Below, piece after piece: positions 2,312-63,070 of a stretch of 64,000 bases of DNA. How positions within the stretch are numbered: the stretch's first letter is position 1; every line of letters begins with the position of its first letter. Both the position numbers and the translations under genes were made by a program. Source of the stretch: Gekko japonicus (lineage: Eukaryota); NCBI RefSeq assembly GCF_001447785.1, contig NW_015162474.1, positions 1,304,417-1,368,416 of the forward strand, written 5' to 3'. The notes beneath the pieces are model-generated. The model saw only the letters and a list, made by a program, of their open reading frames with translations, was not told the origin of the DNA and searched no databases.

Positions 2312-2558
2312 TAGGGTTGCCAGGTCCCCCCTGGCCACTGGTGGGGTATGGGGGGGTAGGGTTGCCAGATCCAGGTTGGGAAACTCCTGGAGATTTGGGA
2401 TTGGAGCCTGGGAAGGACGGGGACCTCTGTGGGGTACAATGCCACAGAGCCCACTCTTCAAAGCATCCATTTTCTCCAGGGAAACGGGTCTCTTTAGTCT
2501 AGAGATGAGCTCTAATTCCAGGGAATCCCCAGGTGCCACTTGGAAGCTGGCATCCCTA
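2312..2558. mobile_element. hAT-type MITE (TAGGGTTGCCA TIR family)
   Basis: TIRs TAGGGTTGCCA / TGGCATCCCTA; 8-bp TSD cccaggta (2304-2311) / cccacgta (2559-2566). Confidence 0.85.
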
Positions 2559-5269: not shown

Positions 5270-7130
5270 AGATGAAAATAATTGCGCACAATATGTAAAT
5301 TGAGTATAATTAGATGGAAGGGGAAAGCAGGCAATCTCCATTTTACATCTTAATCCAAGAAACATGCCATGGGGACTATATACACCTAGAAGGAAATTGT
5401 TACTTCTCCATTCCGGGCGGCTATTGGGCACACTGGTCATCTGAGAGCGGGTCTATGCTTTTTAATATCAGTGCTGTTATTCCCCAAATCAGCCCAGCTG
5501 TCATCCTGTCTTCCTTTTGCCTAAACTATTATTTAAATTAACTGCTCTTTGTTGATCACTGTCAATGTATATTTACCCTCTTGTAGTTGTCACACAGATC
5601 TACTGACCCTGAATGAGTACCTAGCAGATCTTGAGACAGAATACCCCTAAGACAGAACTCCTTATAGAGGAAAAATTTAATGCAAGAATTAGAAAGATGA
5701 CCTATCCCTGTGTACTGCCCTAGAAACTGATCCGAGTTACTCCTTTTTCTTTTCCTTTTCCAACATAAGATGCTCCGAAGACACACAGATGAACCCAGTG
5801 GGTTACTTCCTAGCGAATTTTATTATGTCCACTGGCAGATTGATCTTGAATGGATCTCCCCAGCATGATTTTCTAGGTGAATTTACTTCTAGCTCAACAC
5901 AAAGATCAAGTGTTATTGATTATGTCATCTTATCACCCTACTTAAGAAAGCTAGACAGGGATTTTTATGTAGATGATTGCATAGAGAGCAACCACTTTCC
6001 ATTGATTATTGTCCTTGAATATGAGTGCTCCCAATCACCACCATTTACTAACAACACATCAGAGAGCATAATCCTCCTATTAAAGGGTTAGCTGGAATCA
6101 GAAGATGGGCGAGGAGATCACTAAGGTACTTGACTCTGAAACTGAACTGAAGCAACAATTAATCAATGCCCAAAATGTGTCTGCGGCCCACATTCATTTC
6201 AGGGAACTTATTAACATAATTAAAACTTTCTTTGCCTGGCGATCTACTGCCTGCAGACATAAATAAGAAATAAATCAGACTCTTGGTTTGATGCTGGAAA
6301 TTGAAAACCCACCTTCAGACCCTCTTCCGTTTTCATCACGACATAGATGCAACTAGACTACCTGCCAATTATTTTGAGCTGAAAAAACAACTTCAGCACA
6401 CTATCATTCTCAAGAAGAGATCACTGCTGAATAAGAAATGGGATCTACTAATCAATGGCTCACTAACTGATTATAAGAAACAATTTTGGGCTCTAGTCAC
6501 GGGTACCCTTTCGGACAGAAGTCGCGCTCTCGATTCTCTAGTCCCTCCCCAGTTATGGATCGCTCATTTCTTAAAATTTATTCTATGATCCATCAGCAAG
6601 CACTTCTGATTACCAAAACAGCATCCTTCAGGATTTCCCCAAATGGCCTTCCATTACTCCAAAGGAAATTAAATATCTAAACAGTAAACTGCAAACCAAA
6701 AAGGGCTCAGGTCCAGATGGTCTCCCCCCAAAAAAAAATTATTCAAGAAACACCTGGGATGGTGGGCCACTCTTCTAGCTACCCTTTTTATTCTTATTGA
6801 TAAAACTGGAAGGATACCTGAATCCTGGACTAAGGCTGTAGTGGCCTGGGTTTTTTACAGCCACAAAACCCCTGGGAATTACCACCCAATAAGCCTTCTC
6901 TTAACGCTACACAAACCATCTGCTGGACAAACGATATTCCTGGCTTCATGACCAAAAAGTTTTGGGCCCTGAGTAGATTGTTTTCTGCTCTGATAGATCC
7001 AGTCTTGATCATTGTATTATACTCATCAACTTCACTGAGAAATATAGAGGTGCTGCGGGGATGTACTGTGCCTTCATCAACTTGAAGGGGACCTTTGATT
7101 CACTATCCAGAAGTTTATTGTGGAATAATT
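5270..7130 (+). mobile_element. Decayed APE-type non-LTR retrotransposon ORF2 (endonuclease + start of RT), possibly RTE-X-like
   Basis: Broken frames give ILIQET, LILNG..GEFT..SVIDY..SNHFPL (APE domain), then GPDGLP, IPESW, NYHPISLL and FINLKGTFDSL (RT motifs); ORF1-like sequence may extend upstream to ~3900. Confidence 0.75.
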
Positions 7131-8288
7131 TTTAAAATTTGTGTCATCAGTAGCATACAACAGCACTGAATCCTAGATCATAGAACTTGTAATGGAATGC
7201 ATGGAAGGATGCTATCTACCAGAGTCAATTCAGTGGTATAAATGAACCTACTACATTGTTTAAAGGATATGAAATTAATACAAACAATGGCTCAGTAACA
7301 TATTGTAATAGAATGACCCAGGAAGGTGCTTTTATAAATGGAATGGAAGATTGTGAACTGCATACAGTATGTATTATCTTACTCTCACTGCACTGTTTTA
7401 TGCTTATATAAAACCATTTTCTGCATTAACATATCATGTCTAAATACTTTGTTTCAGATTGCTGTAATCCTAGTCCTATAACATTAATTATCAGAAGCTT
7501 CATTCTATTTATTATGACTTACATGCCTTGAGTCTCAGTGAAAAAGATGGGCTATAAATAAAATAATCACAATGCGCCCTCCTTGCATGCAGTTGCTTGA
7601 ATGTGCGCGCGCAAGATTTATAGTAAAAATGAAGCAAATTCCAACAAAAGTGAACTTCTTCCAAGTAGCATGACTCTAGTTTGTCCTCCTTGATTCAGAA
7701 AATGACCTTACATTTTCACATTGTATCTACTGCACATTGCTTTTTGCTGGGGAAGCTGGATTTCTTTCTATACCAATGCTTCTCAAGCGGTTTCAACTTG
7801 GGGTCCCCTTGGGGCTTTCTAGAACCCCCAATATGAGGTGGCATACAAAGATCTGAACTGAGAGCACAGCATAAGTGCCAGCACTTCCAGGGACCTCCCT
7901 TTCTTCTGCAACTCCTCAGAACAGCTTTCAAAAAGTTGGAGAGGGTTCTTCCTGGTCTCTCCTGGACTCCCTGTGTTTGCTCTGCCGGCTCAGGAAAGAA
8001 GAAAAGCAGCTTCATAGGATAACTTGATACACCCCCTCCTGGTTGCTAGAAGGCATCTGCCTACCCAACTCACCTGAAGAAGGCTGCAGTGGTTCAGCCA
8101 GTGGTAGCCAACCTGTGACAATACTTCACAGACACACACCAGAGGTCTCTTCCCCCCCACCCCCGGAAGGGTCTTTGGAAAAAGGCTCATTTTCTTAAAG
8201 TCTGTGTTGAAGGACTCCTGAGACAATACCAGGTTTCCTCCTGAGGGATGCTCAGCACAGAAAAGACCACCAAACAGAGACATTAGAC

Positions 8289-9135
8289 CAGGAGCTCCCA
8301 ACATGGGACCTATGGGCACCGTAACACCCACAAGGGCAGGGCCAGATGGGGCTTTTGCCCATCAGGGCTTCTAATTTGCCCTTGGAGATCTGATTGGCTG
8401 AGCAAATTTTTTAAAATGCTGCTTTGGGAGCAGCTGCCAGCACAGCGCAAGGATCTTTACAGAGTGACAGAAGGTAAGCAAGAAATTATTTGCAAGAAAC
8501 TATTTAAAAACAGTATGTTCATTTTCCATAAAATTTTCTTGGCGGATTTTTCCAGAGTAGGTCGCCAGGCCTTTCTCCAATATGGAAGAGCAAGGACATC
8601 AGCCTAGCAACCAAATGCAGATTAGTCCGTGCTATTATGTTCCCCATAGCAACCTATGGCTGCGGAAAGTTGGACCATGAAGAAGCAAGGCAGGAGGAAA
8701 ATCGACTCATTTGAGCTGTTGTGCTGGAGAAGGCTTCCTTGGACAGCAAAGGTGACAAACAAGCAAATATTGGAGCACATAAAACCAGACATGCCATTGG
8801 AAGGGAAAAATCACAAAGCTGCGACTGACTTATTTCAGCCATGTCATGCGGAAGAACTCACTAGAAAAAGCAATTATGCTTGGACTGGTTAGCAGCAAAA
8901 GGAAACCTGGCCGCCAAAGAACACCAGCCTGAAAATGGAATAACTCAAAGAAACAGTACAAGATCGGAAAACGTGAAGAGAGCTTTTTCCTGAAATGTTG
9001 AAAAGCTATTATTATACACTCCCTGACATTCTGTGGTTGGCTCTGCCTCCTATGGTGGCCATTTTGTGGTTGCACCCACCACCTTGCATCAGAACTCCAG
9101 AGGTCCCCATAGGCTGAAAAGGGTTGGGAACCCTG
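8289..9135. mobile_element. Non-autonomous hAT element containing an RTE fragment
   Basis: Ends CAGGAGCTCCCAAC / GTTGGGAACCCTG; 8-bp TSD cattagac (8281-8288) / cattagat (9136-9143). Confidence 0.7.
8575..8990 (+). mobile_element. RTE/Bov-B LINE 3' fragment
   Basis: ESWTMKKQGRRKIDSFELLCWRR..PWTAKVTNKQILEHIKPDMPLEGK is the RTE C-terminal region; similar to the ORF at 34573-34929. Confidence 0.85.
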
Positions 9136-9583
9136 CATTAGATGCTACAGGTAAACCATACTCAGCTTCATTTATCCAGAGCAAATGAAATGAAGTAGAC
9201 GTCAGCTATTTCTTACAGCCATATGTATCCCACAATATGACAAAACCATATGTGTCACTTCTTTGAGTTGGACATGAAATCAGCAACTCTCCTTAATCCA
9301 TACATCACGTGATGTGTGTAATAATACCTGTTTGCCTGGGGCCCACAGCCCCAGCGATTTCAGCTTCAAGTTCAAATTTCTACCTGAATACTTCTTAGCT
9401 TGCCATGAAACAATTAGTTTTTACTGCCCTGGAATCAGCTACAGGTTATAGCTAACTACTGCTTTATTGGCCACAGGCATTAGTATGATAGACTAATATT
9501 AAATAGGGCTTGCCCCACCATGGTTTGAGAAACACTGCTTTCTCTACATGGACCTACACACATTTTCAGTAATTAAAGATTAG

Positions 9584-9929
9584 TAAAGGTAAAGGTTTCC
9601 CTTGCTTGAAAGCCAAACGAACCTGACTCTAGGAATGCAGTGCTCATCTCCGTTTCCAAGCCAAAGAGCCAGTGCTGTCCAAAGGCGTTTCTGTGGTCAT
9701 GTGACCGGCATGACTAGACACTGAGGTGCACAGAACACTGTTACCTTCCCACTGAAGCGGTACTATTTATCTACTTGCAATTTCTTGCTTTCAGACTGCT
9801 AGGTTGGCAGTAGCTTGGACCAGAAACGGGAGCTCACTCCGTCATGCGGCACTTGGGTCTCGAACTGCCGAACTACCGACCTTCCGGTCTGCAGTTCAAC
9901 GTCTTAACCACTTGAGCCACTGCAGCCAC
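9584..9929 (-). mobile_element. Sauria-type SINE, full length
   Basis: Homologous to 145-490; 14-bp TSD taattaaagattag at 9570-9583 and 9930-9943. Confidence 0.9.
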
Positions 9930-10499
9930 TAATTAAAGATTAGCCAGTTTCTATTTGTGGACTTCTTCCATCACTTTGTCCAAGTTCATCTATCTACAGT
10001 ACCACTGGTTTCCCTCTCCCATCTCTGTGTTTACTACCAAGCTTTTGCCTATGCCTTCCTTTTCTTTTTATCAGTGCACCTGCTTTGCTGCTTTACCTTT
10101 CCATGTGACTGATACATATATTAGAAAACTTTCTCCCAAACCACCACCCTAATCTCATCTCATCTGCTTCTCTTTGGTCACCTGACTCTAGCCCCATCAT
10201 TAATTACCATCCCTGGCTTCTTCCTTGTCTACCTACAACCCATCTAAGCAAAGACCCTCTCATTTCTAGTCTTGTAAGCAGCATGTTGAATATTACTGAG
10301 CATGTGGCTGAATGAACTCGACAGTACAACTCCTGTTACTCATACGTGGCTACAAGATGCACAGTGCCTTAAAAGTGGGGCTTTTTCTGAGGGGGGGGGG
10401 ATTTTGGAAAATATTCCAGATCAACCAGAGGACAGTTTTAGAACTTCACAACGATGGTTTTGTTTCCTTTATGTCTGAGAGCTGTCCCAAAGTCAGGTC

Positions 10500-10600
10500 T
10501 GTATTTCTCATCACCAGACACTCCTTCACTTATCAGAACATTTCAAGGCTCTTGAGATTAATGATTGTTGCTATGTAGACGGAGTATATATTATAGCAGG
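10500..10600 (+). promoter_or_regulatory. Putative LRRC10 core promoter (TATA-like element and GATA site)
   Basis: TATATATTATA at ~10585 and TTATCA at ~10530, 130-190 bp upstream of the ATG; motif match only. Confidence 0.35.
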
Positions 10601-10713
10601 ATGGAGGAAGTTGCCAGAAGAACAGCACACAGGGTAAAAAAAAAAGGCAGCTTCCCCAGTCCACAAGATTTATTCTTGTAGCAACAGCCCATTTACGTTG
10701 TGAAGTTTTCAGG

Positions 10714-11550
10714 ATGGGTAATGTTTTCAGAGCAGTTATTGCTTTTATTCCTTCTGATGACTGTCAGAAATACCTCCTAGGGGACCTTGAAGAGATGCCA
10801 ATTGATAAGATGCTGGACCTGAGCAGCAGCCAACTGAGGCGATTTCCCTTGTGTGTTTGTTCGTTTAGGGAGCTGGTCAAGCTGTACCTGAGTGACAACA
10901 ATCTGAACTATCTGCCCCCTGAACTAGAACAGCTCCAGAACCTCCAGATCCTTGCACTGGATTTCAACAACTTTGAAACACTCCCCTTAGTTGTGTGCAG
11001 CCTGAAGCAACTGTGCATTCTTTACCTGGGAAACAACAAACTCTGGGACCTTCCTATGGAGCTCCACCTTCTGAAGAACCTCAAGACCCTGTGGATTGAG
11101 TCCAACTGCCTGTACCACCTGCCCAATGTGGTGTGTGAACTGAGGCACCTCAAGACCTTGCACGTTGGATCCAATGCACTACGCTCCCTCCCTGGACAGC
11201 TTCGATACCTGCAGGAACTTCGTACTATCTGGCTATCGGGCAACCTTCTGGCTGATTTCCCACCTGTGCTGCTCCACATGCCCTTTCTGGAAGTCATTGA
11301 TGTGGACCGCAATGCTATCCGTTACTTCCCCAGTCTCAAGCAACTCAGCGGGTTAAAGCTGGTAATCTATGATCATAATCCTTGCAGAAATGCACCCAAG
11401 GTGGCTAAGGGGGTACATCGGGTAGGGAGGTGGTCAGAAGAGAGCCCAGAGCCTAGGAAAAGATCTGGTCTGGACAGGGGTAAAGAAGCTGAGGATATCA
11501 CTTCACTTCTGCCTCTGCCTCTCCCCTGCAAACTGTCTCTGTCTGATTAA
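10714..11550 (+). CDS. LRRC10: Leucine-rich repeat-containing protein 10 (cardiac), intronless
   Basis: 278 aa: MGN..AFIP.D.CQ.Y, tandem LxxLxLxxNxL repeats, LKLVIYDHNPCRNAPKVAKGV.RVGRW.EE; syntenic with CCT2/FRS2 as in human 12q15. Confidence 0.97.
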   Translation: MGNVFRAVIAFIPSDDCQKYLLGDLEEMPIDKMLDLSSSQLRRFPLCVCSFRELVKLYLSDNNLNYLPPELEQLQNLQILALDFNNFETLPLVVCSLKQLCILYLGNNKLWDLPMELHLLKNLKTLWIESNCLYHLPNVVCELRHLKTLHVGSNALRSLPGQLRYLQELRTIWLSGNLLADFPPVLLHMPFLEVIDVDRNAIRYFPSLKQLSGLKLVIYDHNPCRNAPKVAKGVHRVGRWSEESPEPRKRSGLDRGKEAEDITSLLPLPLPCKLSLSD

Positions 11551-13261
11551 TGAGCTTCCTCAAGATTGCCGCACTGGCAGCCTTCAACAGAGAAAACAGC
11601 TGAGCAAGGTTGTGACTCTTGCACCAAACAATGGGCCTGAGAACCGCACAATCAGGTGCTTTTAGGGACCATGCTTTTTCACATGTGAATTTACATTTCT
11701 GTAGGTTGTGCACAGGTAATGTGAGCAATTACAGCAATTGCCTAGGATTAAAAAAGAAACCTTTCAACTTGACTAGCACTCCATAGATATCCACAAAAAC
11801 TTATTTGAAGAAAAAAGCAAGTACACAATAAATTAAGTGTCAAGCAAGATAAATCCGTTTTGGATAACTGGATGATGTTGCATTTATTTTTAATTTTTTT
11901 GTACAAGGAAAACTGAAGGTATAGCACTTGATATGATTTTAGGAACTGCCTAGAAGTGTTTTTGACTATTTTCAAAAAATTCATACTGCAAGTGTACCTT
12001 ACCTCTGTTGTGCAGTAGTCTAAATGAGAGCTTTCAAGGCCACTGTAGAATGCCACAAAGACATCTAAACTGGTTTATCAACTGCTTCCTTTCACAAGGA
12101 AACATAGATCTGCAAGTGGAACTAGTCAAGGGTTTCTTTTCAGCACCTTCACCTAACTCTTTTGGGGAAATCGTGATGGATATAGTAGGAAATCAAAATA
12201 TTGTTAGTGTGTATTTATTGCAAGTAACAATTATAATTGCATTTTATATATGGCCATGTATGACAAGATTATTTGCAGTAATTTTTCTTTCCCTTTGGAA
12301 ACACATCAGTGAAAAACAAAAGTTCATGGTATTTGTTTTTTGTCCCCCTCCCCCTTTTTTTGTTTACTGAAAGAAAACCCGCTATTACTTTAGGGGCCGT
12401 TTACTAACACACCAGTGGGAATGCCCTCAAATGACAAAGGTGTACAGCCACTTCTTTGTGTATTTTGCTAAAAAAGTGCAGACACCGCTAGATGTTTCCT
12501 CACAATTTCCAAAAGTATCTTGGCTTTCGACTATAAGCAGCCTCACTTGATATACGGTTGGACTCACAGGCTTCCAGATAAAGATGTTTTTATAGTAAAA
12601 TCAACATATTTCATACAAATATTCATTCAGGAGGTGTGCCCTGACTTGAACAAACTGTACTATAATTTTTAAGGTTACAGTATTTAGCATAGCAATGCCA
12701 TAGTTATTCCTCATGTAAATATTAAGGCCTATTATTGTGTTTTAGTATAAAATTTATACATTAATTCTGATCTAGTAACAGCAGTGTTTTATACATAAAT
12801 TAAATCTGAAAGTAGCCTGACAAACTGAAAACCACTAGTAAAGAATAGTTTTCCCCCCCCCCCCCCCCCCCGAAAAAGTTCCATCAGGTGAGTCCTCATT
12901 TTGCACTCTGGAGTGGTACTATTATGAATAAATGATACCACATGTAATTCCTATTCTATCTAAATTGAATCTAAGAATGAACCCAAAATTGAAGTTTATT
13001 AACAAAAACATATGCAAAAAAGATCTTCACTGACTCTAGGTCTGAGAACTTCATGTCTTGTAGTACTGGGAGCTTAGACAGTGCATGCGAAAAAGCCATA
13101 TTGCTGCAGAACTATTTCATGAAGTTCCTCTAAACATATAAATAACACTTTTGCAAAACTATGAAGGCTAAGTATGGGTTGCCAATTACAGTATCAATAT
13201 TCTATTTTCTGGGATTTATGATGGCAAACAGCTATAATACAAGAGCTGTAAGAATACATCC

Positions 13262-14010
13262 ATTCCCCAAGAGATACGTCACTATAGTTTCTAACAAATT
13301 TGGAAAAAAGCCTCAAATGCTAAAGATAATGGTGGTGAGTTTATATTGCCACACACACAAACCTTCTTGGCAGTGGAAGGCATCCTGCAGAGGAAGTGGG
13401 TGAGCTTTACACCTGAGCAGAAGGGCACTGCTGAAAGGAAACGGGGAGATCTTTACTGGGGATGAGGAAGTGCATGCTCATGGATGCAGGCCTACCCAAT
13501 AAGTGGAGGGGTCAAAGCAATCCTGACTGCAAAGTATCTCCAGAACAGACTGCCCACAAAAGGGAGCACAAATATGGCATGACAAGGGACACATCAGAGT
13601 ATTTGGCAGCAAGGCCTTCACATCTGAACCCAGTAAGAAAAGACAAAAACTAGATCCTAGAACCAGAGAAAGTGTTTTTGTGGGATATGATTCTGGTGGT
13701 AAGGGGTATAGAGTGCTGTGCCCAGAAACAGGTGAAGTCTATGCCAAGCATGTGATTCACTTGGACAAAAGCAGAACCAGTAGAGAAGAGACTGCATCAT
13801 GTGACTCAGAAAAGGCAGATGACCAGTACCGGCTCTTGGACCTTGAACCAGGGCACAATGATGAAACATCAGAAGAAGACACAGAACGTGAGAAGGCAGA
13901 TTCCAAAGCAACTGTGCCCGAGATTCAGGGCAGTACATCAGAGGAATGAGGAGACAGGTGGACTCGAAAGCTCTGTGACAGCAGATGAAAATCCAGGACC
14001 GCACCTCCGA
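13262..14010 (+). mobile_element. Ty1/Copia LTR-retrotransposon integrase remnant
   Basis: Frameshifted NKFGKKPQML..DNGGEF..TPEQKGTAERK..MRKCMLMDAGLPNKW..AILTAKYLQNRLP..HIRVFGSKAF..KKRQKLDPRTRESVFVGYDSGGKGYRV. Confidence 0.88.
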
Positions 14011-14886
14011 TGCTCATCACAGATAATCTCTGTAATTTGTTTGAACAGCATTTCCCCCTTAACCAGGAAATGTGAAGTATCGGGGATACTGCGTAGAGCT
14101 TCTGTGCTTCCAAGTCAAATGATATTTTTTTTTACATTTAACCCAATCTCTCAGTGAAACAGTGAAAATCTGTGCTACAATTCAGATGTGTTCTTTGGTC
14201 TGAGATCTTCAATTGTTTCTCTTGAATTCCCTGGTATCCTTTTCTCCTCCATTATATATAACCTGTGAGATCCACAAGCTACTCTCAGAGTTCAGTGAAA
14301 AACACAAAGGCAGCATCTGACAGTTGACTGTACCCTGCAAGTACTTATACCATCACACATTAATTAATATTTAGGGTACTAAAAGTTTCTATACATTTTG
14401 CTGCAACACTCATAGGGCTACCTCTCCAGGAATTTGTAAGAAAATATACCATGTGGAATTTTTTCTTGAAACACTTGTGCATTTCAGTCAGATCTAACAG
14501 CAAGTGGAGAATTCCAATTAATTTCTGCTTGCAATAATTAAATATTTTTAAAACATAGTGACTTGTAGTATCTTAATTGCAATTATGCATTTTTAGCCAT
14601 TAGAAGTAAACAGTGCTTGTGTGACCAGATGTCTGGGCATCTTCCTTGGATTCAGTACTCCATATTATCTAAATTCTAACCACTTCTACAAAAAGGACAT
14701 ATTTAGAGGTACTGTACTACTAAGGAAATCAATAGGTCAATTAATATATTTGAAATTTTTATTACAGAGTACTAACAACGAATAGAGGAGAGATATTGTT
14801 GTACACTGAAGTGGATTGGTCTCTGAAATAATATAAGTTAAATCAACAAAAGAATAATCACATGCCAGTTCTAGATATACTGACTC

Positions 14887-14892
14887 TTTATT
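14887..14892 (-). terminator. CCT2 polyadenylation signal AATAAA
   Basis: TTTATT on the + strand, 70 nt past the CCT2 stop codon. Confidence 0.7.
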
Positions 14893-14961
14893 CCACAAAA
14901 GTAACACAATGAAGTACTTTGCAAAGTTCTGGTCCATATGGTCTTATTGACGGCAGAATAC

Positions 14962-14992
14962 TTAACATGGGTAACGGTCTGGTACACGTTTC
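14962..14992 (-). CDS. CCT2: CCT2 exon 16 (KRVPDRYPC*)
   Basis: ttcag acceptor, TAA stop. Confidence 0.93.
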
Positions 14993-17525
14993 CTGAAAGA
15001 AGAACCAGAATTTAGTACGTGGATGTTTAAGGAGAAAACTATCTTTCCTTATATATAATTGAGTAATGGGGTGGCACTTTCTGAACATTCCACACACTCC
15101 TAAATCAGTTGGCTCCATGATCTGTCACTCAGAAGCTGTCCCTATCCACTGGCTGTGTTGCCTAAGTACCGCCCACAGTGCACTCCGTCAGCCGCCACTC
15201 AAGAGTACTCACGTGCCATTGGCCAGGTGCTGGGTCTGCTCCTCTTCCCCGCCCACTCCAGCCACTGTTCCCTGTCAGAATACACTCTCTCTCCTGAGAA
15301 AGACAACTTGCCTGCTTGGCTCCTCTGTGGGACTAATTTTTCTCTCAGTGGCTGTTGGTAGGCAACCAAGCTTGGTTTTGTCAGTAAAAAGACAAAGGAA
15401 CAAAACTCTTTCCATGCCTTTGTGAAGAACTCATTGGGGCCAGTCCTGACTAGGGTTGCCAGCTCCAGGTTGGGAAATTCCTCCTGAGTCCTTCTGCCTC
15501 CCCAACACTGCCCTCCGCAGGATCCACCCCCCAAATCTCCAGGTATTTCCCTACTCAGAGCTGGGAACCCTACTTTCCCCTCAGTGCCTGTTGCTAGGCA
15601 ACCAAGCTTGGTTCTGTCAGTAACAGGCCCTTTCCACAGCTATTTTGGCCTTTGGGAGAAAACTCATTGGAGCCAGTCCTGACTGGAGTTGCCAGCTCCA
15701 GGTAGGGATATTCTGTGTCTATGGAAGTCAGAGTCTGGGCAGGGGCCTCAGCTAACAGAATGCTATAGAGGCCACTGTCCAAAGCAGTTAATTTTCCCGG
15801 GGGGAGGGGGAGATCTGTTGTCTGGAGTTCAGTTGTGATACCTGGCGATCTTCAGGCTCCACCTGGAGGTTGGCTATCTTAGGTGTAGCAGTCAGCGCTT
15901 CAGAGCAGTGTCTGCTAGACCCAGGTTCTTGTGGCAGCTGACTGGGTGATTTTGGACCAGTCACAAACTTTCAGCCTAACCTACCTCACAGGGTCGTTGT
16001 GGAAGTCAAAGGGGGGGGGGAGAATGATGTAAGCTGCTATGGTCCCCATTGCAGCGAAATACTACTTTTCCTCCTGGGGAACCACTATTGCCAATCTCGA
16101 GGTGAGAGCTGGAGATCACTCAGAATTACAACTGGTCTCCAGATTCAGTTACCCTGAAGAAAATGGTGGACTCTGTGTCCTAATACTCTGCTGAGATACC
16201 CCCCCATGACAGCCAATGTGACGTAGCAGTCAGGGCTTCAGAGCATGGTAGAGGCTGCAGGTGTGTGTGTGGGAGACGGAAAGCTGAAGAGTGAGGGGCA
16301 GATAAAGGCAGGTTGATGCTTGGCTGGGAAGGAGACAGAGTTGCCAACTCCAGGTTGGGAAATTCCTGGAGACTTAAGGGGTAGAGCCTGGAGAGGGTGG
16401 GGTTTGAAGAGGGGTGGGACCTCAGATAGGTACAATGCCATAGACTCCACCCTCCAAACCAGCCATTTCCTCCTGGGGAATCACTGCCACTCTGGGGGAC
16501 CATTGCCAATCTCCAGGTAAGGGCTGGAGATCACTCAGAATTACAACTGCTCTCCAGGAGGGAGGGCAGAAGTCAGCTGAAGACAGAGGGGCAGATAACG
16601 GTAGGTTGATGATTAGCTGGGAAGGAGATGGGGTTGCCAACTCCAGGTTGGGAAATTCCAGGTGATTTGAGGGGTGGAGCCTGGAGAGGGTGGGATTTGA
16701 GAAGGAGTTAGACCTTAGGTAGAATGCCATAGATTCCACCCTCAAAACCAGCCCTTTCCTCCTGGGTATCAATTGTTGCCAATCTTCAGGTGAGGGCTGG
16801 ATTTTTACAACTGCTCTTCAGGTAGCAGAGATCAGTTCCTCTCGAGAAAATGCTGAGGTCGCCACAGCAAATTGACACTGAGTGTCCAAGGCCGGGGCAC
16901 TCTCCCAGAGCCTCTTTCTAGAGTTCGTTGTATTTATTTCCACAACGGGCCTTATTCCTAGTATTCCAAATATGTCCTAAAAATTCTCCAGTTTAATTTT
17001 GAGCAAATAAGCTTACCTGGAAGCACAGAGTGTAAAACCATAAAATCATTTCACAGACATCTATATCGTTATAAGCAATGCTCCCTCTACCTGTGGGGTC
17101 TTGTGAGCAAAAATTCTACTTTGTGAGCTACTGGTATTAAAGTTGTGAACGAGCAATTTGGCTACTGCATAAATTAGTTTGCTGTGGAGCCATCCTTCCT
17201 GAGCCAAGACAAAAATTTGTGAGCTGGAGGCTAAAAAACTGTGAGCTAGCTCACACTAACTCAGCTTAGAGGGAACACTGGTTATAAGATGTCCATTAAG
17301 ACATCTTATAAAGCAATTATTTTTTCTGTTAAAGTTTAAAGACATTCTCTCATAAGTTGTACCTTGGAGCTGCTTTGATGATGTCATCCACACGGAGAAT
17401 CACTTCTGCTGCTTCTGCAGCACTCAGCAACACTTGCCGTTTCACCTGAAAGCTTTCAATTACTCCCAGATTTCCCATGTCTGCAATGGCACCCTTCTTC
17501 ATGTCTTCAAGATATTAGAATAATA

Positions 17526-17570
<45 letters not shown>

Positions 17571-20500
17571 GTCTCCCCAAGGTAAAAAACCAGAATGGCT
17601 TTGCATATCATCATTTTGCATTCTCTACTTAGCCATATAAATCAAGTTTGTGCTTAGTGAAGCCCCACATGATTCTGGGATAACTTCACCAGAATCAAAT
17701 TAAGCACCTGATATACATTATCCACTTCACATGTTCTTTATCTCTTTTAAAAGAGCTGCATAAGTTCTTTGGGGCTTAATATTTAATGAAATTCAGGTCG
17801 ATTGGAAAGACTTGATTCTGTGTAATTTTTACTGTTGTCCTTGGACAGAACACCCTGCATCACAAGGAATTATTGAAACTCAAGCCTAGTAAGCCACAGA
17901 AACACAGAAGCATAAATTTCACTATAGAACCTATCTGTAAAGATCTCACCGAGTCCATATGTAGTTTTTCCTTCAATGTGAGCAGCTCGAAGCTGGGCAA
18001 CCAGATCTGCACTGTCATAGCCAGCATTATCAGCTATGATGGTTGGGAGCTAATAAAATAAAAAGGCTATTAGGGAATTTCTGAAGGAACATGCAGGTCA
18101 ATTACAATTTTTTTAAAAAATGAAAAATAGTCAAAAATCTTCACTAGCCTTGAATTTTACATGATTTTCTCTATATAATACACATTTTCAGACTTACTGG
18201 GTTTTATGTGCAAGGAGGGAACAGGGTTATTATAATTAATTTTTAAAAAATAGTATAATGTAGGATGCAGGATTTTTTAAAAACTAAGAACCACAAACGA
18301 GTCAGCTAAACCAGAAAAAAAACATTCTCACATGAACACACACATGAAGCTGCCTTACATTGATTTAGACCCTTAGTCCATCAAGATCAGTACTGTCTAC
18401 TCAGACTGGCAGCAACTCTCCATGGTCTCAGGCAGAGGTCTTTCACATCACCTACTGCCTGGTCCTTTCAATTGAAGATGCCAGGGACTGGACCTGGGAT
18501 CTTTTGCCTGCAAAGCAGAAGATTCTCCACTATGCCACAGCCCTTCTCCTAAATATGTAACTCAGGCATCATGGAAAAACTCCTTTGTTCATCACTGGTT
18601 TGTTGCCATGCTCACTTGCTCGCTCCCTCCACATGCTCATGCAGACAGCACGACTTAACGCCCCATCATGTTAGAAGCATTCACTTGAACCATAATTTTT
18701 ATATTTTAATTTATTCCTTCTGAAAACAGGTACGGAGGCAGGGAACATGCAAACAAGGACAGCAACAAGCCAGGCTTATGCTTGTTACGAACAGGGGTTT
18801 GTTTGCAATGTCTGAATACCACCACAGCATGTTTCCAATTCTGTTCACTTGGGTAAATAACATTACTGTCAGTTAGAGGCCAACTGCAAGCAAAATTCTG
18901 CTTGTGGAACAGGACAACCCCGCCTCTTCCCTACTGGAGCCCTCCTCATCTTGGAAAGTCACTTCTGTAACAGCTGGGTTTGATGCATGGAGGAATGTGG
19001 TGGGGGAAAAACAACAGCAGAAGAGATCAGGACACCACCTCCTCACGGTCTTCCCATGTTACTACCTCTGCAGCACCACAGCTGTATTCCTATACATACT
19101 GCAAGTACCTTTTCATCTTTATCATTCAAATATTATAAAACACTTGTTTTACAAAGAAAATTTATTCTACACCCCCAAATTGTATCAACTATGCAAAAAG
19201 CAGAATATTTTACTAAGTTAAAATATGAAATTTTTAGTTCCTATTCCATTGCTGCTACTGCCTCCACATACCCAGACTGTAATTAGTACTGCGGTTCTTG
19301 ACAAAATGTCACATTTTACAGCAGGAGGGGGAAATGAGGGAAGCTGGCTGCCAGCTTGAAGCATCCAGGCTGAGAGTTTCTGCTGCAGATGTTTAAAGCC
19401 AGGGCCAGGGCCTTAGCTAGATGAGACACTAATCTGGTGGACACCAACTCTTATCTACTTTTTAGCCTTGGGGGGGTTATACTGTGATATAAATTTGTTC
19501 AAAAGTGTATTTTTGTACACCATTTGGCTCCCCACTGGAGATAAAAGTGGGATTAAAATATATTAATATAAGTGCAATGATCACAATGATTTACAAAAAT
19601 AATTATTTCCAGACATACGTTACTTTGCTACAGAACGTACTACATCAAAATGAAGAATATACATCTCTGACAATCCATCAGTTTACTTAATAGAACAGAA
19701 ATAACTTTACTACACTTTCCCAAATCTCAAAGGATAAACAATCTCAGTTTAGTAACCCCCACCCCCGAAAACCAGAAGTCAGTCAGTGCAAGCAGCAGAA
19801 AAGAACCTGAAGACCAGAAATGAAAATAAACAGCCAATGGTGACGTGGCTGCAATCACTTTATCTCACAAGGCACCTATGTTGAGTTTCTGTTACTATAC
19901 AATGGGAGAAGTTTGGCAGGAGGAGAAGGCAGAAGGAAGAGGCAGGTTGTAGCGTTGTGGCTCTTCTCCTTTGTAATGTAACTCTGAGGTGGGTGAAGGG
20001 CACCACACCTTCAGGGGTCTGGACTGATAAATAAAGCAATCTGCATAAGGGAACAGTGACTCAAGGCCTTATGGACTCCAGGTATGATGTTCCCCCTGCC
20101 CCCAGAGGGCACTAAACATAGTTGTTTGAACTACAAGCTTGGAAGTGAGAAAAAAGATCTCATTTACAATAACCAATAACACACCAGAAACATAAAATTT
20201 ATGTAAATCACTTATCCTCATTTAGTTCTACAGACTTGCTCAGTAATTAACTGAACACTAACTTACCATTCTCAGGGCCTTGGCAAAAGACTCCATTGCC
20301 ACAGACTCTTTGCCTGGTGTTCTGCTTGCAAGCTCTGTGACAGCATTCGCCATTAGCATCTCAGAGCAGCCTGTAAGCAGAAACTAGAAATGTTAACAAG
20401 CAAGCAACAATTAAAGATATTTACATTCCCTTTAAAAATTAAAAGAAGGTTGAATATTCACCTCCACCATATACTGTTCTAGTATCTTTTATAGTCTGTG

Positions 20501-23500
20501 CAAGGACACAGAGAGCATCATGTAAAGATCTTTCCGCCTCATCTATGATCTGCTGCGTCGCACCACGGAGAACTATGGTACAAGCTTCACCTAAAGACAG
20601 CCAAGATTACAAAACAGCAGTTAATTCTAGTTAGATCAACCACTCAGAAATTTTTAATGTCCCAATATCTACCATGACCCAGTTCAAATGTTATTCTTGC
20701 AGCATGGTTGGCGCCCCACAATGACTGGGTCTCCCATTTCATCTGAATGTATGGGAAACTCTGCCTCATGGATTTCCTCCATCATGTAATGGAGTCCCAT
20801 GCAGTGTTCCCTCTAAGCTGAGTTAGTGTGAGCTAGCTCAGTTTTTTAACCTCCGGCTCACACATTTGTGTCTTCGCTCAGGAAGGATGGCTTCAGAGCA
20901 AACTGATCTATGCAGTAGCTGAATCACTCGCTCACAACTTTAATGCCAGTAGCTCACAAAGTAGAGTTTTTGCTCACAAGACTCCACAGCTTAGAGGGAA
21001 CATTGGTCCCATGTCCACCCCCCTCTCTCAAATGAGCAGATTCTGTCATGAAGAAGTATCTGCATAACCTGGCCACCCATAGTGGCAGAGGTGGAACTTC
21101 AAGAATTAACAGTGGGTTTGAGAAGAACTCCTTCGACTTGAAGGAGATCTTCTCAGCCTTCCCTTTCCCCCCAGATGAAGCCACCACAACCTACCCATAG
21201 CAACTCCAGAGAAGTGAATAAGTTTATCTTCACCAATCATAACTTCTTCAATAAGGTTGCAGGTCCCTAGCTTTACCAGCTCTGGGTGATCGAAGGTTGA
21301 AGCAATTTCACCACCTGTGAACGTAAATTTACATAGCTACTGGCTACTATAAAACACCTTTTAAAAACTTAATATTTTGTAGGATAAAAATCCACATCCC
21401 AAACTGCAGTGTACGCTGCTAAAACAAACACCATGAACTAACGTTATGTAAATCAATAAGAACTAGAAACTGAACGCTAGAGCTGAATTACGATCTTTCG
21501 TAGCTGGTAAGGTCTGTGGAGAGGCCTGGTTTGGCGGCAGCTTTTTTTTTTTTTTTTTGCCTCGAGATGTCAGATCATTTAATAAAGTGAAGACATTTGA
21601 ACAAAATCTGTCCATTGTTATGCCACAAAACTTGAATACCAGCAACTTAATATCTTCGAAAAGATTCACAGAACGAGGGATGTTTTGGATCTTTTCAGTG
21701 CTTGACAACTTTTTGTGTGTGTATTGTGTGTATAGCTCTGTCCAACCTGATAATGCATGAATCATTAGCCAGCTTCATAAGGAGCTTTAGGAGCTTAAAG
21801 TTATTTTTATAAGAATTTCCAGCTTCTCTTCCACAAGCCAAGAGAAGAAGAACAGCAAGGAAAAAATCTGTCCACTGTAGGATAAAAAGAATGGCTGGGA
21901 TCCATGGGGAGAATTTCCACCAGTTCTCACCAGTATGTTACATTGCACAGTATTAATAGGAAATATAGGAAAATCAGATTGCATGAGTGGAATCTGCAGT
22001 TCTTTGGATTCAAATCTATGTCTTTTAACTCTTAGGACACAGCCAAGTGCCTTCAGTTCACAGACAAGTTGAAGGACACCATTGCTCTAGCCTTTAAACC
22101 TCTAGATACACACAATCTTCAAGTACTACATTTTGCAGACATTTCATCCACTTCTGTTGTAGCAATTTCTTCACTGAACACTTTGAAATGACTGCAAATA
22201 CAAAGCCAAAAATCAACAATATGTTGGTCAACACCAACTCTTGAATAAATAATTTGTCACTGTACCTGTAACAAGAGCCAAACGTTCAACTCCAGCAAAA
22301 TCTGCATGTTCAATAGCCATAACACCTGCAGCAGCAAACAACTGTTCTGGGTAGTTATAGATCAACTGCCTGCAATTAAAATGAATGCATCATAATGTGG
22401 AAGAAAGCAGGCTTATTTTTTCTCTCTTTACAGAAAGATTTCATGAAGGCCCACACATACCTGTTGATAAAACAATTTATTCCATGCTTCAGAATACGCT
22501 CAACCTTCTCCTTCATTTTCTCTTTTTCAGCTTGTTCTATTTCTGCCACCTTTGCTGTAGAATCCACTCGTACACGGGATCCAAATATCTAAATTCAAGA
22601 ATCAAGACCAGGCAGCAATATTTCCTAAATTGTTTTTTTAATACACACTCACACTACATAAATAAAATACATGAACACCTGCATCTGCCTTCTACTGGCT
22701 GAGATCCTTCGTCCATCAAGGTCAATACTGTCTATTCAGAATGGCAGCAGCTCTCCACTGTCTCAGGTAGTTATGTCTCATCACCTACTGTCTGGTCCTT
22801 TTAACTGGAGATGCTGGAGGATTGAACCTAGGACCTTCTGCATGATGAGCAGATGCTCTACCACTGAGCCTTAGCCCCTCTCCCTCTCATAGTGTTTACT
22901 GTGCTATTTTGTGCAGCATTTTAATTGTTTATATTATTTTATTTGCTTGTAAGCTCTTGAGCTGCTTCAGTATAAAAAGTGGGCCAGAAATTAATTTTTT
23001 AAATGTAATTTTTAGTTTACTTATATTCCATATTCTGGCAGATCAAATGTAGCAAATGAAAGTGTTTTTACCTCCCCCCCCCATCACTCACCTTAATTTT
23101 ATCAGTATCCATGCCAGTATTTGCAATAAGTATCTTTGCATTTTCAATTCTTTTTGGCTGGTTTACTCCAATTTTTTTATCCAACAGAAAACCTGAAAGG
23201 GAAGACAAGAGGCAAACAGACTTACTTTACAACAGTAAACCTATTTGATACTTTCCATTTTGCAATTAATTGTATAACATTCATTTAGAAGAGAAATTAA
23301 AACAGGAAACTTTTCCTAACCCACTGCCTGAAACATCAATAGTTTTAGACTGTGGGAAATTAAAATACATATAGTCATGAAAAAAACCTCCCAGTGACAG
23401 TGTGGAAAAATATGTACACTGGAAATGGGTAACAAAGGTATAGCCAGAACACAAGAAAATAGTTAAGCATCCATCCTTGAGAAATCAAAGTTAAGACAGA

Positions 23501-34558: not shown

Positions 34559-35505
34559 GTTGTTGTTGTTGTTCAGTTGCACAGTCGAGTCCGACTCTTT
34601 GCAACCCCATGGACCACATCACGCCAGGCCCTCCTGTCTTCCATCATTCGCCAGAGTTTGCTTAATTTCATGTTTGTTGCCTCAATAACACTGTCTAACC
34701 ATCTCATCCTTTGCCGTCCCCGTCTTCTTTGACCTTCAATCTTTCCCAGCATCAGGGTCTTCTCCAGTGAGTGCTCCCGTCTCATTTGGTGGCCAAAGTA
34801 TTTGAGCTTCAGCTTCAGTAACTGGCCTTCCAGGGAACAGTCAGGGTTGATTTCTTTTAGGATTGACTGATTTGATCTCCTTGCAGTCCAAGGGACTCTC
34901 AAGAGTCTTCTCCAGTACCATAATTCCAAAGAATCTATTCTTCAGCGCTCAGCCTTCCTTATAGTCCAACTCTCACAGCCATACAGTACTACTGGGAATA
35001 GGGTTGCAAGTCAATCTTCGCCAGGAGCAAGGGGCTGCCGGCCGGCATCTGGTGTGTGTGCGCACCGCATGCACGTCACCCGGAAATGACGTGACAACGC
35101 CAGGCACGCTGGGGGCGGGGCCACGGCCATACAAGGGAAAACCATAGTTTCCCCTCGTATGGCCGTGGCCCCGCCCCCAGCATGCCCGGCGTGGTCGCGT
35201 CACTTCCAGGTGACACGCACGTCGGGGAGGAGTTCCCCCCGAGGCCCGATCCGGCGGCGCTGGGGAACGGGCCTCTGGGGCGGGGGTTTCCCCGCCCCCC
35301 GGGGGGACTTGGGAAGCCTTAGCTGGGAATACCATTGCTTTGACCATACAGACTTTTGTTGGCAAGGTGATGTCTCTACTTTTTATTATGCCGTCAAGGT
35401 TTGCCATCACTTTCCTCCCAAGGAGCAGGTGTCTTTTAATTTCATGGCTGCAGCCACCATCTGCAGTGATCTTGGGTCCCAGGAATGTGAAGTCTATCAC
35501 TGTCT
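34559..35505 (-). mobile_element. Bov-B/RTE LINE 3' portion, interrupted by a MITE
   Basis: ELWYWRRLLRVPWTARRSNQSILKEINPDCSLEGQLLKLKLKYFGH..WRDVVHGVAKSRTRL; CTGAA(CAA)n tail. Confidence 0.93.
34999..35321. mobile_element. CpG-rich hAT MITE inserted in Bov-B
   Basis: TAGGGTTGCAAGTC / GACTTGGGAAGCCTTA ends; TSD actgggaa (34991-34998) / gctgggaa (35322-35329); Bov-B frame resumes across it. Confidence 0.85.
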
Positions 35506-41316: not shown

Positions 41317-41505
41317 TAGGGTTGCCCATTCCTGGTGGGGAAATTCCTAGTGATTTGGGGTGGAGCTTGGGGAGGGCAGAGTATAACAGCATGGAGTCCA
41401 GCCTCCAAAGCAGCCGTCTTCTTCAGGGGAACTGATCTCTGTAGTCTAGAGGTAAGTTTTAATTCCAGGAGCTCTCCAGGCCCTACCCAGAGGTTGGCAG
41501 GTCTA
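41317..41505. mobile_element. hAT MITE (TAGGGTTGCC family)
   Basis: Homologous to 2312-2558; TSD gataatac (41309-41316) / gatactac (41506-41513). Confidence 0.8.
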
Positions 41506-61200: not shown

Positions 61201-61960
61201 GGTTCCCTTCCTAGAATGCAATGATCTGGCTGCAGTGATCCACGCAATGGTCACCTCGAGGTGACTACTGCAATGCTCTCTACTTGGGGCTGCCCTTGGT
61301 GCAACTCCAGAAGCTGCAGCTGGTACAAAATGTGGCGGCCAGGCTGCTGATGGGCCTCCCTATGTGGGAGCATATCTGGCCTGTGCTAAAGACATTGCAT
61401 TGGCTGCCAATAACATACTGGATTTGCTTCAAGGTGCTAGTTTTGACCTTTAAAGCCCTTTATGGTCAGGGACCTGCCTACCTGAGGGACCGCCTTTCCC
61501 CACATATTCCCCAGAGAGCACTGCAATCAGGGGCACAAAACTGCTTGGCCCTCCCTGGCCCGAAGGTCGCCAGGTTGATATCGACCAGGACCAGGGCATT
61601 CTCTTTGGCAGCTCCGACTTATTGGAATGAGCTCCCGGGCAAGATCAGGGCCCTGCGGGATCTTCCACAGTTCCGCAGGGCCATGAAAACAGAGCTCTTC
61701 CGGCAGGCATTTCGGTAGGAGCTGCACTTTATCAGGTATGCCCTGGGCTGATTTTATCTCCAGCTTAAGCCACCTAGGTGGAGGCACCACTGAACGTGTT
61801 CTTACACGCACTTTATTATATTTGTACCGCCATTGGTATAGTAATGGTTTTAAATTGTCTATTATGTATTTTATACCGAGACCTATATTATTTTATTCAT
61901 TCTTATGTAAGCCACCCTGAGCCTGCCTCGGCAGGGAGGGCAGGGTAAAAGTTAAAGTAA

Positions 61961-62125: not shown

Positions 62126-63070
62126 TCTCTCCTTATATATAATTGTAAAGTGGAGTGGCACTTTCCAGCTCTCCCATTGGCTGTGCAATGCGCTCCCTCA
62201 GCCATTGGCTGGGTGCTGTGTAGGGACCCCCTGTTGACTTATGCCCTATTGGTTCATAGTGTGTGCTTACTCCTACAGTTGTGCCTTATTCATTTAGTGT
62301 GTGTGCACTTCATAATTGTGTAAATAGTTAAATAAATTCTTTTATTTGGGCTAATAATCTGTGTTGTGCTCTGACCACATAGTCTCCCCTGCTCTGCACA
62401 ATACCAAAGGGAGGGAGTAGCCCAGGGAAGCAAGGAAAGGCCAGACCCTTGGGTTGCCAACTTTCCAGGGATCCCCCAAAGATTGGGGATTCCATCTCCA
62501 AATAGGGGTCTCACTGTCCCTCTAAAAAAGCAGTGACAATTCAGTGAGTGGTGGCAGCGAACTTAAGGAGGGAGATACGCCCACCGGATGAGGGTGGGAG
62601 GCAAACAGCTGAGTGGTGAACTGGAGCCCGTTTTGCCACAGTAGGCAACCAAGCTTGGTTCAGACAAAGGAAGGAAACCCTTCACAGGCCTTTGTGAGGA
62701 ACTCATTGGGGCCAGTCCTGACTAGGGTTGCCAGCTCCAGGTAGGGAGATTCCTGGAGATTTTCTGGTAGATCCTATGGAAACCAGTGTTTGGGGAGGGG
62801 AGAGGCCTCAGCTGAACAGAATGCCATAAAGCCCACCTTCCAAAGCAGTTGTTTTCTTTTTTTGGGGGGGGGGAGATTTGTTGTCTGGAGTTCAACTGCT
62901 CTTCAGGTAGCAGAGATCAGTTCCTCTGGATAAAATGGTGGACTCTGTGTCATTATACCCTGCTGAGGTCACCACAGCAAATTGACGCAGAGTGCCCAAG
63001 GCCTTGGCACTCTCCCAGGGCCTCTTCTAGAGTTTGTTGTATTTATTTCCACAACGGGCCTTATTCCTAG
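62126..63070 (+). mobile_element. Non-autonomous Helitron-like element, copy 2
   Basis: A|TCTCTCCTTATATATAATTG ... GTTTGTTGTATTTATTTCCACAACGGGCCTTATTCCTAG|T; interrupts an L2 with no TSD. Confidence 0.85.

What the first reader, a model, noticed from the sequence alone, without database searches (positions are those of the whole stretch)
15042..16961. Non-autonomous Helitron-like family carrying hAT-MITE and SINE cargo (copy 1, 49 bp from the CCT2 terminal acceptor)
Seen: two elements 47 kb apart (15042-16961, 1920 bp; 62126-63070, 945 bp) share a 5' end TCTYTCCTTATATATAATTG and a ~150-bp 3' end with a 9-bp-stem hairpin (two to three G-T pairs) 7 nt before CTAG. Both sit between A and T. Inside are pieces of the TAGGGTTGCC hAT MITE that occurs free, with 8-bp TSDs, at 2312 and 41317; the short internal MITE at 15451-15572 has no TSD. 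Both copies share the junction ggggccagtcctgac|tagggttgccagctccagg. Copy 1 also holds a SINE piece and internal duplications (~15355 vs ~15595; ~16310-16560 vs ~16600-16820). Established: 5' TC, 3' hairpin + CTRR, AT target and no TSD are Helitron hallmarks, and Helitrons capture DNA. Inference: a rolling-circle vehicle is amplifying cut-and-paste MITE ends, and repeat masking would probably report it as unrelated MITE fragments. Whether the family is already catalogued is unknown to me.
Basis: partly seen in the sequence, partly recalled or inferred. Interest (0 to 1): 0.8.

Follow-up and report, generated by a model that had tools for sequence, protein, structure and literature searches.

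The report
High-copy non-coding Helitron in lizard intron
Two copies of a non-coding rolling-circle transposon (Helitron) built largely from scraps of other transposons sit in this lizard-type window; the family is real and present in thousands of copies, but it is an ordinary example of something already described in lizards, bats and plants.

Summary
Elements at 15042-16961 and 62126-63070 share a 5' end (first 30 nt 24/30, starting TC) and a 3' end (last 30 nt 30/30, ending CTAG). There are no inverted termini. Each has A before it and T after it, and the flanks are AT-rich. A small hairpin (6 Watson-Crick pairs, not 9) lies 11-14 nt from the 3' end. The reported MITE pieces, the 34-nt linker|MITE junction shared by both copies, the SINE piece and the internal duplications are all present.

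I laid about 1x whole-genome reads from two individuals on copy 1. Depth rises from about 0-2 in the flanks to about 800-2,600 over the 5' region and 6,000-9,000 over the 3' tail. In one run, 2,710 reads break off exactly at 16961|16962 into unrelated AT-rich sequence whose consensus starts with T. Read joints show that copy 2 is close to the canonical form. Copy 1 carries extra internal duplications and insertions.

This is a non-autonomous Helitron family of roughly 10^3-10^4 copies with a mosaic body. I could not test for an autonomous RepHel partner, for empty sites, or for a Dfam/Repbase entry. Composite non-autonomous Helitrons in lizards are already published (Anolis), so interest is low. 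Other windows of this genome carry similar, unchecked Helitron notes.

The parts
15042..16961 (+). Copy 1 of the non-autonomous Helitron (1,920 bp). It lies antisense in the last intron of CCT2, with 48 nt (14994-15041) between it and the terminal-exon acceptor.
   Evidence: Read depth steps from about 0-2 to thousands at both ends.
15042..15240 (+). 5' terminal region starting with TC. The first 40 nt align cleanly with copy 2. Homology continues with indels to about 15240.
   Evidence: first 30 nt 24/30. Depth is about 810 to 2,600 per roughly 1x run.
15338..15450 (+). 'Linker' unit 1, ending in ...GGGGCCAGTCCTGAC at the junction with the MITE. It is duplicated at 15574-15683.
   Evidence: Depth is about 2,000, similar to the 5' region.
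15451..15572 (+). Short 122-bp hAT-type MITE with both ends and no 8-bp target duplication.
15574..15882 (+). Second linker (15574-15683) plus a diverged full-length MITE (15684-15882). Its core, 15704-15789, is the lowest-copy segment of the element at about 175x.
15883..16060 (+). Piece of a high-copy SINE-like repeat with a tRNA-like head (GTAGCAGTCAGCGCTTCAGAGCA...GGTTC). The head recurs at 16223-16245.
   Evidence: Depth is about 2,600-3,600. There is no other copy in the window and no Rfam match. The SINE label rests on motif reading only.
16189..16850 (+). Copy-1-specific internal block that splits the canonical 3' region. It holds two MITE-derived duplicates (16282-16477 and 16575-16766) and repeated short pieces.
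   Evidence: Most other genomic copies join 16188 directly to 16851, seen in about 600 reads per run. Also.
16851..16961 (+). 3' terminal tail, 92% identical to copy 2. The first ~12 nt, TGCTGAGGTCGC (to about 16862), still resemble MITE sequence in reverse orientation by eye. The remaining ~100 nt are tail-specific and end in CTAG (16958-16961).
   Evidence: Depth is about 6,000-9,300. In run X22, 2,710 reads have loose ends starting at 16962.
16926..16947 (+). Subterminal hairpin CGTTGT-N10-ACAACG. The stem ends 14 nt before the 3' end, or 11-12 nt if the G.T extension is counted.
62126..63070 (+). Copy 2 (945 bp), close to the canonical arrangement. From 5' to 3' it has the 5' end, a 475-bp body not shared with copy 1 (62166-62640), the linker (62641-62722), a MITE 5' part (62723 to about 62897), a reverse-orientation MITE fragment (62911-62973) and the 3' tail.
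2312..2558 (+). Free hAT-type MITE with an 8-bp target duplication (7/8 match). The 5' end is duplicated at 2357.
41317..41505 (+). Free hAT-type MITE with an 8-bp target duplication (7/8 match).

Best explanation
Both elements are non-autonomous members of one canonical (Helitron1-type, TC...CTAG) Helitron family that is very abundant in this lizard-type genome. By analogy with the tested bat element Helraiser, a RepHel transposase encoded elsewhere would nick at the 5' TC and peel off one strand. It would use the subterminal hairpin plus CTAG as the stop signal and insert the strand between A and T of an AT-rich site without duplicating the target.

The family's body is not transposase-derived. 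It is a mosaic of a specific 5' region, a 'linker', fragments of a hAT-type MITE in both orientations, and a 3' tail of about 100 nt specific to the family. Because those pieces lie between the Helitron ends, they have been copied along with it. Copy 2 is near the canonical form. Copy 1 is a derivative that gained a tandem linker+MITE duplication, a SINE piece and a 662-bp block of duplicated MITE-derived sequence.

Shown here: the termini, the flanks, the copy number, the sharp 3' boundary and the amplified junctions. Inferred: the RepHel-mediated mechanism and the route by which the cargo was acquired.
For: Shared, window-unique termini. Homology confined to TC...CTAG plus 2 nt on each side. 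The last 30 nt match 30/30 and the first 30 nt 24/30, which meets the >80% 3'-end family and 5'-end subfamily rule quoted in PMC2997563.

No inverted termini, 7/30. A before and T after in both copies, with flank GC of 0.31 and 0.39 against 0.413 for the window. A hairpin is present in both copies.

Reads: depth is about 0-2 in the unique flanks, about 810-2,600 in the 5' region and about 6,100-9,300 in the 3' tail, the same in two individuals. In X22, 2,710 reads have loose ends at 16962. Their consensus is AT-rich, starts TT and has only 0.39 agreement, which indicates many different insertion sites. Joints 16188>16851 (about 600 reads per run), 16540>16805 (about 800), 15383>15640 (about 250) and 15682>16356 bridged by TAGGGTTGCCAACTCCAGA (about 500) show that the composite junctions are multi-copy.

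Helraiser has the same anatomy: TC/CTAG ends, a palindrome 11 nt from the end, an A|T target and an AT-rich 3' flank (PMC4778049).
Against: No RepHel-encoding element with these ends was seen. No empty site was examined, so 'no target duplication' rests on flank reading. Both copies happen to have TA on both sides.

The hairpin is short and AT-rich, and its folding z-score in copy 2 is unremarkable.

The exact 5' boundary is fixed only by the two copies plus a depth step inside an 86-nt bin. The 5' loose-end rows fell outside the truncated table.

The 3' tail is 3-10 times more abundant than the 5' region, so several subfamilies or truncated copies must share it.

Raw-read depth was 0 across the left flank 14500-15015 in both runs, where about 1x was expected. 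The tool warns that such dips are filter artefacts.
Confidence: 0.85

Rival explanations
1. A cut-and-paste non-autonomous element with a TA target duplication (Tc1/mariner-like MITE), not a Helitron.
For: Both copies are flanked by TA on both sides.
Against: The ends are not inverted repeats, 7/30 matches between the first 30 nt and the reverse complement of the last 30. The plurality 3' flank across thousands of copies starts TT, not TA. The TC/CTAG ends and subterminal hairpin fit a Helitron.
Confidence: 0.04
2. There is no mobile unit with these ends. The two loci are chance or segmental juxtapositions of abundant MITE and SINE fragments, and the shared ends belong to some other repeat.
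For: Most of the body is MITE- or SINE-derived. The 3' tail is far more abundant than the 5' region.
Against: Both ends are paired in the same order and orientation at two loci 47 kb apart with unrelated flanks. The non-MITE 5' region, the linker and the 3' tail are themselves at 10^3-10^4 depth. The 3' boundary is sharp to the base in thousands of reads.
Confidence: 0.05
3. It is a Helitron family, but the MITE and SINE pieces are ordinary nested insertions and later rearrangements in individual copies, not cargo amplified by the Helitron.
For: Copy 1 clearly has private rearrangements. Joints that skip 15384-15639 and 16189-16850 dominate in the reads. MITEs of this family do insert nearby.
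Against: The identical linker|MITE 34-mer is in both copies. Linker-to-MITE and MITE-to-tail joints are seen in hundreds of reads per roughly 1x run. None of the internal MITE pieces has an 8-bp duplication. The reverse-orientation MITE fragment directly precedes the tail in both copies.
Confidence: 0.06

Closest known systems
Non-autonomous Helitrons of Anolis carolinensis (Helitron-1N1_AC and Helitron-2N1 to 2N5_AC; Novick et al. 2010, PMC3014272)
   Same: They are lizard hosts' non-coding Helitrons of 0.5-2 kb, with hundreds to more than 1,000 copies each. Helitron-2N3_AC is already described as a composite holding SINE and Poseidon fragments.
   Different: The paper prints no termini to compare and lists no hAT with a TAGGG... 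end. The Anolis families are described as internally deleted autonomous copies and most are only 2-3% diverged. Here the body is mostly MITE-derived and the two copies differ by 8-20% in shared parts. Identity with any Anolis family was not testable.
Helibat1 / Helraiser and HelibatN families of vespertilionid bats (Grabundzija et al. 2016, PMC4778049)
   Same: 5'-TC and CTAG-3' ends, a palindrome about 11 nt upstream of the 3' end, insertion between A and T, an AT-rich preference strongest on the 3' flank, massive amplification of non-autonomous copies, and diversification by end bypass and capture.
   Different: The Helraiser palindrome is 19 bp. Here the stem is 6 Watson-Crick pairs with a 10-nt loop. 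No sequence similarity was tested, and no transposase is known for this family.
Horizontally transferred animal Helitron families such as HeligloriaB, found in Anolis, bat, lamprey and Rhodnius (Thomas et al. 2010, PMC2997563)
   Same: Non-autonomous amplification in a lizard genome with no autonomous partner found there. Family is defined by the 3' end and subfamily by the 5' end.
   Different: I have no evidence for or against horizontal transfer here. Exact-match scans of viral and metagenome contigs with the termini were blank, which says little.

Membership tests
Canonical Helitron (Helitron1 type) | 5' terminus TC | tested here: met
   Both copies begin TCT(T/C)TCC. Inter-copy homology starts 2 nt upstream.
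Canonical Helitron (Helitron1 type) | 3' terminus CTRR | tested here: met
   Both copies end CTAG. In run X22, 2,710 reads break exactly after it.
Canonical Helitron (Helitron1 type) | Short palindrome or hairpin about 10-12 nt upstream of the 3' end | tested here: met
   CGTTGT-N10-ACAACG at 16926-16947 ends 14 nt from the terminus, or 11-12 nt with the G.T extension. It is weak: -5.7 kcal/mol and z -2.46 in copy 1, 5 pairs and z -1.28 in copy 2.
Canonical Helitron (Helitron1 type) | No terminal inverted repeats | tested here: met
   7/30 matches between the first 30 nt and the reverse complement of the last 30.
Canonical Helitron (Helitron1 type) | Insertion between A and T of the host, without target-site duplication | tested here: inconclusive
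   A precedes and T follows in both copies, and the plurality 3' flank over thousands of copies starts with T. No empty site could be examined, and both copies have TA on both sides.
Canonical Helitron (Helitron1 type) | Dispersed multi-copy family with the same ends at unrelated sites | tested here: met
   There are two copies with unrelated flanks in the window. Read depth is 10^3-10^4 times the flank depth, and the 3' flanks are heterogeneous with agreement 0.39. Pairing of this 5' end with this 3' end genome-wide was not tested.
Canonical Helitron (Helitron1 type) | An autonomous RepHel-encoding partner with matching ends | not testable with these tools
   No eukaryotic genome search was available. 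No RepHel ORF is in the window, and no scan note on one was found.
Helentron / Helitron2 | Short terminal inverted repeats, insertion between T and T, no CTRR end | tested here: not met
   No inverted termini, A|T flanks and a CTAG end.
Tc1/mariner-type MITE | Terminal inverted repeats plus a TA duplication | tested here: not met
   TA flanks are present but there are no inverted termini. The family-wide 3' flank consensus starts TT.
hAT-type MITE (the free copies and the internal pieces) | YARNG-type inverted ends and an 8-bp target duplication | tested here: met
   The free copies at 2312 and 41317 have TAGGG.../...CCCTA-like ends and 7/8-matching 8-bp duplications. The internal pieces keep the ends but lack the duplication. 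The YARNG and 8-bp criteria are quoted from PMC3014272.

The most novel reading that the evidence does not exclude
The Helitron family acts as a significant second amplification route for the hAT MITE. Thousands of MITE ends in this genome, including complete two-ended units such as 15451-15572, would owe their position to rolling-circle copying. These could still be excised or re-mobilised by a hAT transposase, so two unrelated transposition systems would feed each other. The evidence here shows only that MITE pieces ride inside an abundant Helitron. It does not show cross-mobilisation.
Probability: 0.1. Interest if true: 0.45.

Novelty: new member of a known kind. Interest (0 to 1): 0.2.

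Why it matters
The main value is for annotation. A family with roughly 10^3-10^4 copies and a body that looks like MITE and SINE debris is easy to fragment or mislabel in repeat masking. Knowing its true ends (TC...CTAG) allows correct counts of MITE versus Helitron activity in this genome.

It adds a further example to the published picture that squamate non-autonomous DNA transposons are mosaics made by capture or recombination.

Copy 1 makes up about 80% of the last CCT2 intron and stops 48 nt from the acceptor. Spliced contigs from two related organisms end exactly at that acceptor. There is no sign of an effect on the gene.

Tried and rejected
1. Exact-match scans for the 3' 21-mer in metagenome contigs and for both termini in viral contigs found nothing. 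These collections are not expected to hold lizard DNA, so the blanks are uninformative.

2. Full-text searches for the MITE and SINE motif strings found nothing relevant. The Anolis DNA-transposon paper lists no TAGGG... end.

3. An Rfam scan of 14900-17100 gave only chance-level hits with E above 0.5.

4. I hoped contigs from other organisms (X3, X20) would show an orthologous filled or empty site. Their long pieces stop exactly at the exon boundary 14994, so they look like spliced cDNA and say nothing about the intron.

5. Sensitive BLAST for further copies of the SINE piece, the 5' body or the copy-2-specific body within the window found none.

6. A sequence look-up in the scan's own notes was blank.

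7. Species identity was not pursued. Run organisms are coded and the protein tools give no organism.

Full report
WHAT IS THERE. The 5' 20-mer and the 3' 25-mer each occur twice in the 64-kb window, only at these elements, against 0.03 and 0.00 matches expected from shuffles.

BLAST between the two loci with 200-bp flanks places the outer limits of homology at 15040/62124 and 16963/63072. That is the element plus two coincident bases (TA) on each side. Beyond that the flanks are unrelated. The first 30 nt agree at 24/30 and the last 30 nt at 30/30. The first 30 nt and the reverse complement of the last 30 agree at only 7/30, so there are no inverted termini.

Both copies read A|TC...CTAG|T. 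The 50-nt flanks are AT-rich, with GC 0.31 and 0.39 against 0.413 for the window.

HAIRPIN. A hairpin CGTTGT-N10-ACAACG lies at 16926-16947. Its stem ends 14 nt from the terminus, or 11-12 nt if two or three G.T pairs are allowed. Folded as DNA it gives -5.7 kcal/mol (z -2.46) in copy 1. In copy 2 a C>T change turns one pair into G.T, leaving a 5-pair stem (z -1.28). The hairpin is real and correctly placed, but weaker than the '9-bp stem' of the finding.

INTERNAL ANATOMY. Using the two free MITEs as probes, together with self-BLAST, copy 2 reads from 5' to 3':
- the 5' region;
- a 475-bp body not shared with copy 1;
- a 'linker' (62641-62722);
- the 5' two-thirds of a MITE (62723 to about 62897);
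- a reverse-orientation MITE fragment (62911-62973);
- the 3' tail, whose last ~100 nt are not MITE-like.

Copy 1 has the same skeleton with additions:
- linker + MITE occurs twice, at 15338-15572 (with a 122-bp two-ended MITE) and at 15574-15882 (with a diverged full-length MITE);
- a SINE-like piece with a tRNA-like head follows at 15883 to about 16060;
- the canonical 3' region is split by a 662-bp block (16189-16850) holding two 86%-identical MITE-derived duplicates.

The identical 34-nt linker|MITE junction is present in both copies and nowhere else in the window. None of the internal MITE pieces has the 8-bp duplication. The free MITEs at 2312-2558 and 41317-41505 do show it, at 7/8 each.

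FAMILY-LEVEL TEST WITH READS (only one call was allowed). I laid two raw whole-genome runs of the species label that best holds the stretch (X21 and X22, different samples) on 14500-17075 at 80% likeness or more. About 1.68 billion letters were read from each, roughly 1x for a lizard-sized genome.

Summed depth in the right flank bin 16994-17075 is 2.0 in X21 and 0.5 in X22. Inside the element it is:
- about 810 in the bin holding the 5' end (15016-15101);
- about 2,600 and 1,500 in the next two bins;
- about 2,000 over the linker;
- 4,000-16,000 over MITE cores;
- 2,600-3,600 over the SINE piece;
- only about 175 over 15704-15789, a MITE variant that both copies share;
- about 9,300 and 6,100 over the last two bins of the element.

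The two individuals agree within a few percent.

In X22, 2,710 reads match up to 16961 and then continue into sequence unlike the window. The consensus of these loose ends is AT-rich, begins TT and has only 0.39 agreement. That is the signature of thousands of copies ending at the same base in different AT-rich sites, with T as the most common first flanking base. It also argues against a systematic TA duplication. The loose-end table was truncated to the best-supported rows, so the corresponding 5' rows were not shown. The 5' boundary therefore rests on the two copies plus the depth step.

Read joints show what the typical copy looks like:
- 16188 joined to 16851, about 600 reads per run;
- 16540 joined to 16805, about 800;
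- 15383 joined to 15640, about 250;
- 15682 joined to 16356 through TAGGGTTGCCAACTCCAGA, about 500.

The loose end 'before 16851' (about 3,600 reads, agreement 0.77) reads like copy 2's ...GTGGACTCTGTGTCATTATACCC. So copy 2 is near canonical, copy 1 carries private duplications and insertions, and the linker-to-MITE and MITE-to-tail junctions are themselves multi-copy.

One caution: raw depth was 0 across the left flank 14500-15015 in both runs, where about 1x was expected. The tool warns that its filters cause such dips, so I draw nothing from it.

WHAT THE OTHER ORGANISMS' CONTIGS SHOWED. The long pieces from X3 (organism B) and X20 (organism E) match the CCT2 3'UTR at about 91-96%, and two of them (X3 record 10, X20 record 1) stop exactly at 14994, the exon/intron boundary, with unmatched sequence beyond (table 8). 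These look like spliced cDNA. They confirm the acceptor but cannot tell whether the insertion is present or absent in those species. No empty site was obtained.

GENE CONTEXT. On the minus strand...[40 protein letters not shown] (about 17353-17514) and KRVPDRYPC* (starting at 14993) are the last two CCT2 exons. Copy 1 is antisense and fills about 80% of the last intron, ending 48 nt from the acceptor. This distance leaves room for the branch point and pyrimidine tract. Copy 2 lies beyond the large FRS2 coding exon (46263-47336, minus strand), presumably in an FRS2 intron, next to LINE reverse-transcriptase fragments.

INTERPRETATION. [quoted passage not shown] It also matches the experimentally studied Helraiser: TC/CTAG ends, a palindrome 11 nt from the end, insertion between A and T, and an AT-rich preference strongest on the 3' flank. 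In Helraiser the hairpin acts as a terminator whose bypass creates new ends and captures DNA (PMC4778049).

I therefore read the elements as non-autonomous Helitrons mobilised in trans by a RepHel transposase. The mechanism is inferred, not shown. The 3' tail is 3-10 times more abundant than the 5' region, so several subfamilies or 5'-truncated copies must share it. An unchecked scan note on another window (s1-816648) describes the same pattern.

How the MITE and SINE pieces entered the master copy cannot be decided here. End-bypass capture, nested insertion followed by deletion, and inter-element recombination all remain possible.

NOVELTY. Lizard Helitrons, their dominance by non-autonomous copies, and a composite family carrying SINE and LINE fragments are published for Anolis (PMC3014272). 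[quoted passage not shown]

A family this abundant would be picked up by any de novo repeat library. I could not query Dfam or Repbase, so whether this exact family is named remains open. The scan's own index lists 76 Helitron notes in this genome. Several describe similar MITE/SINE-carrying composites (s1-815307, s1-832993), and one followed-up Helitron was judged ordinary (s1-830839). These are leads, not evidence.

VERDICT. It is a new member, or at most an uncatalogued family, of a well-known kind, and interest is low.

Noticed in passing
window 14506-14994: Long contig pieces from runs of two other coded organisms (B, E) match the CCT2 3'UTR at about 91-96%. Two of them (X3 record 10, X20 record 1) stop exactly at the terminal-exon boundary 14994 with unmatched sequence beyond. 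They look like spliced cDNA although the runs are guessed to be DNA.
   Followed up: partly
window 14500-15015: Raw-read depth is 0 in both roughly 1x WGS runs across the whole left flank, while the right flank shows about 1x. This is probably the tool's conserved or human-like read filter.
   Followed up: no
window 62176, 62204, 62248, 62705 and 15218, 15433, 15666: The 5' region and the linker of the Helitron carry repeated (C)CATTGG motifs, which are CCAAT boxes on the opposite strand. Copy 2 has three within its first 130 nt. These could be NF-Y-type sites spread by the family.
   Followed up: no
window 17076-17280 and 20802-21005: An inverted pair of a different repeat, 89% identical over 206 bp, brackets CCT2 exons. 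The scan has already noted this as s1-821695.
   Followed up: no
window 27341-28192 (+), 59322-59825 (+), 60779-61264 (+): Open reading frames with LINE reverse-transcriptase and endonuclease-like sequence, read by eye from the translations. The last two lie just upstream of Helitron copy 2.
   Followed up: no
window 35075-35214: A 140-bp stretch that is 87% self-complementary, a near-perfect palindrome, inside an ORF-like stretch on the minus strand.
   Followed up: no
window 2312-2400: The free MITE at 2312 has its 5' end twice, TAGGGTTGCCAGG at 2312 and TAGGGTTGCCAGA at 2357, 45 nt apart.
   Followed up: no
window 10714-11550 (+): An intact single-exon 278-aa leucine-rich-repeat ORF in the position expected for LRRC10 next to CCT2.
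   Followed up: no
window about 17540-17610: A trinucleotide (AAT/ATT)n microsatellite in the CCT2 intron just upstream of the penultimate exon. It shows as runs of N and I residues in the translations; these are amino-acid letters, not assembly gaps.
   Followed up: no
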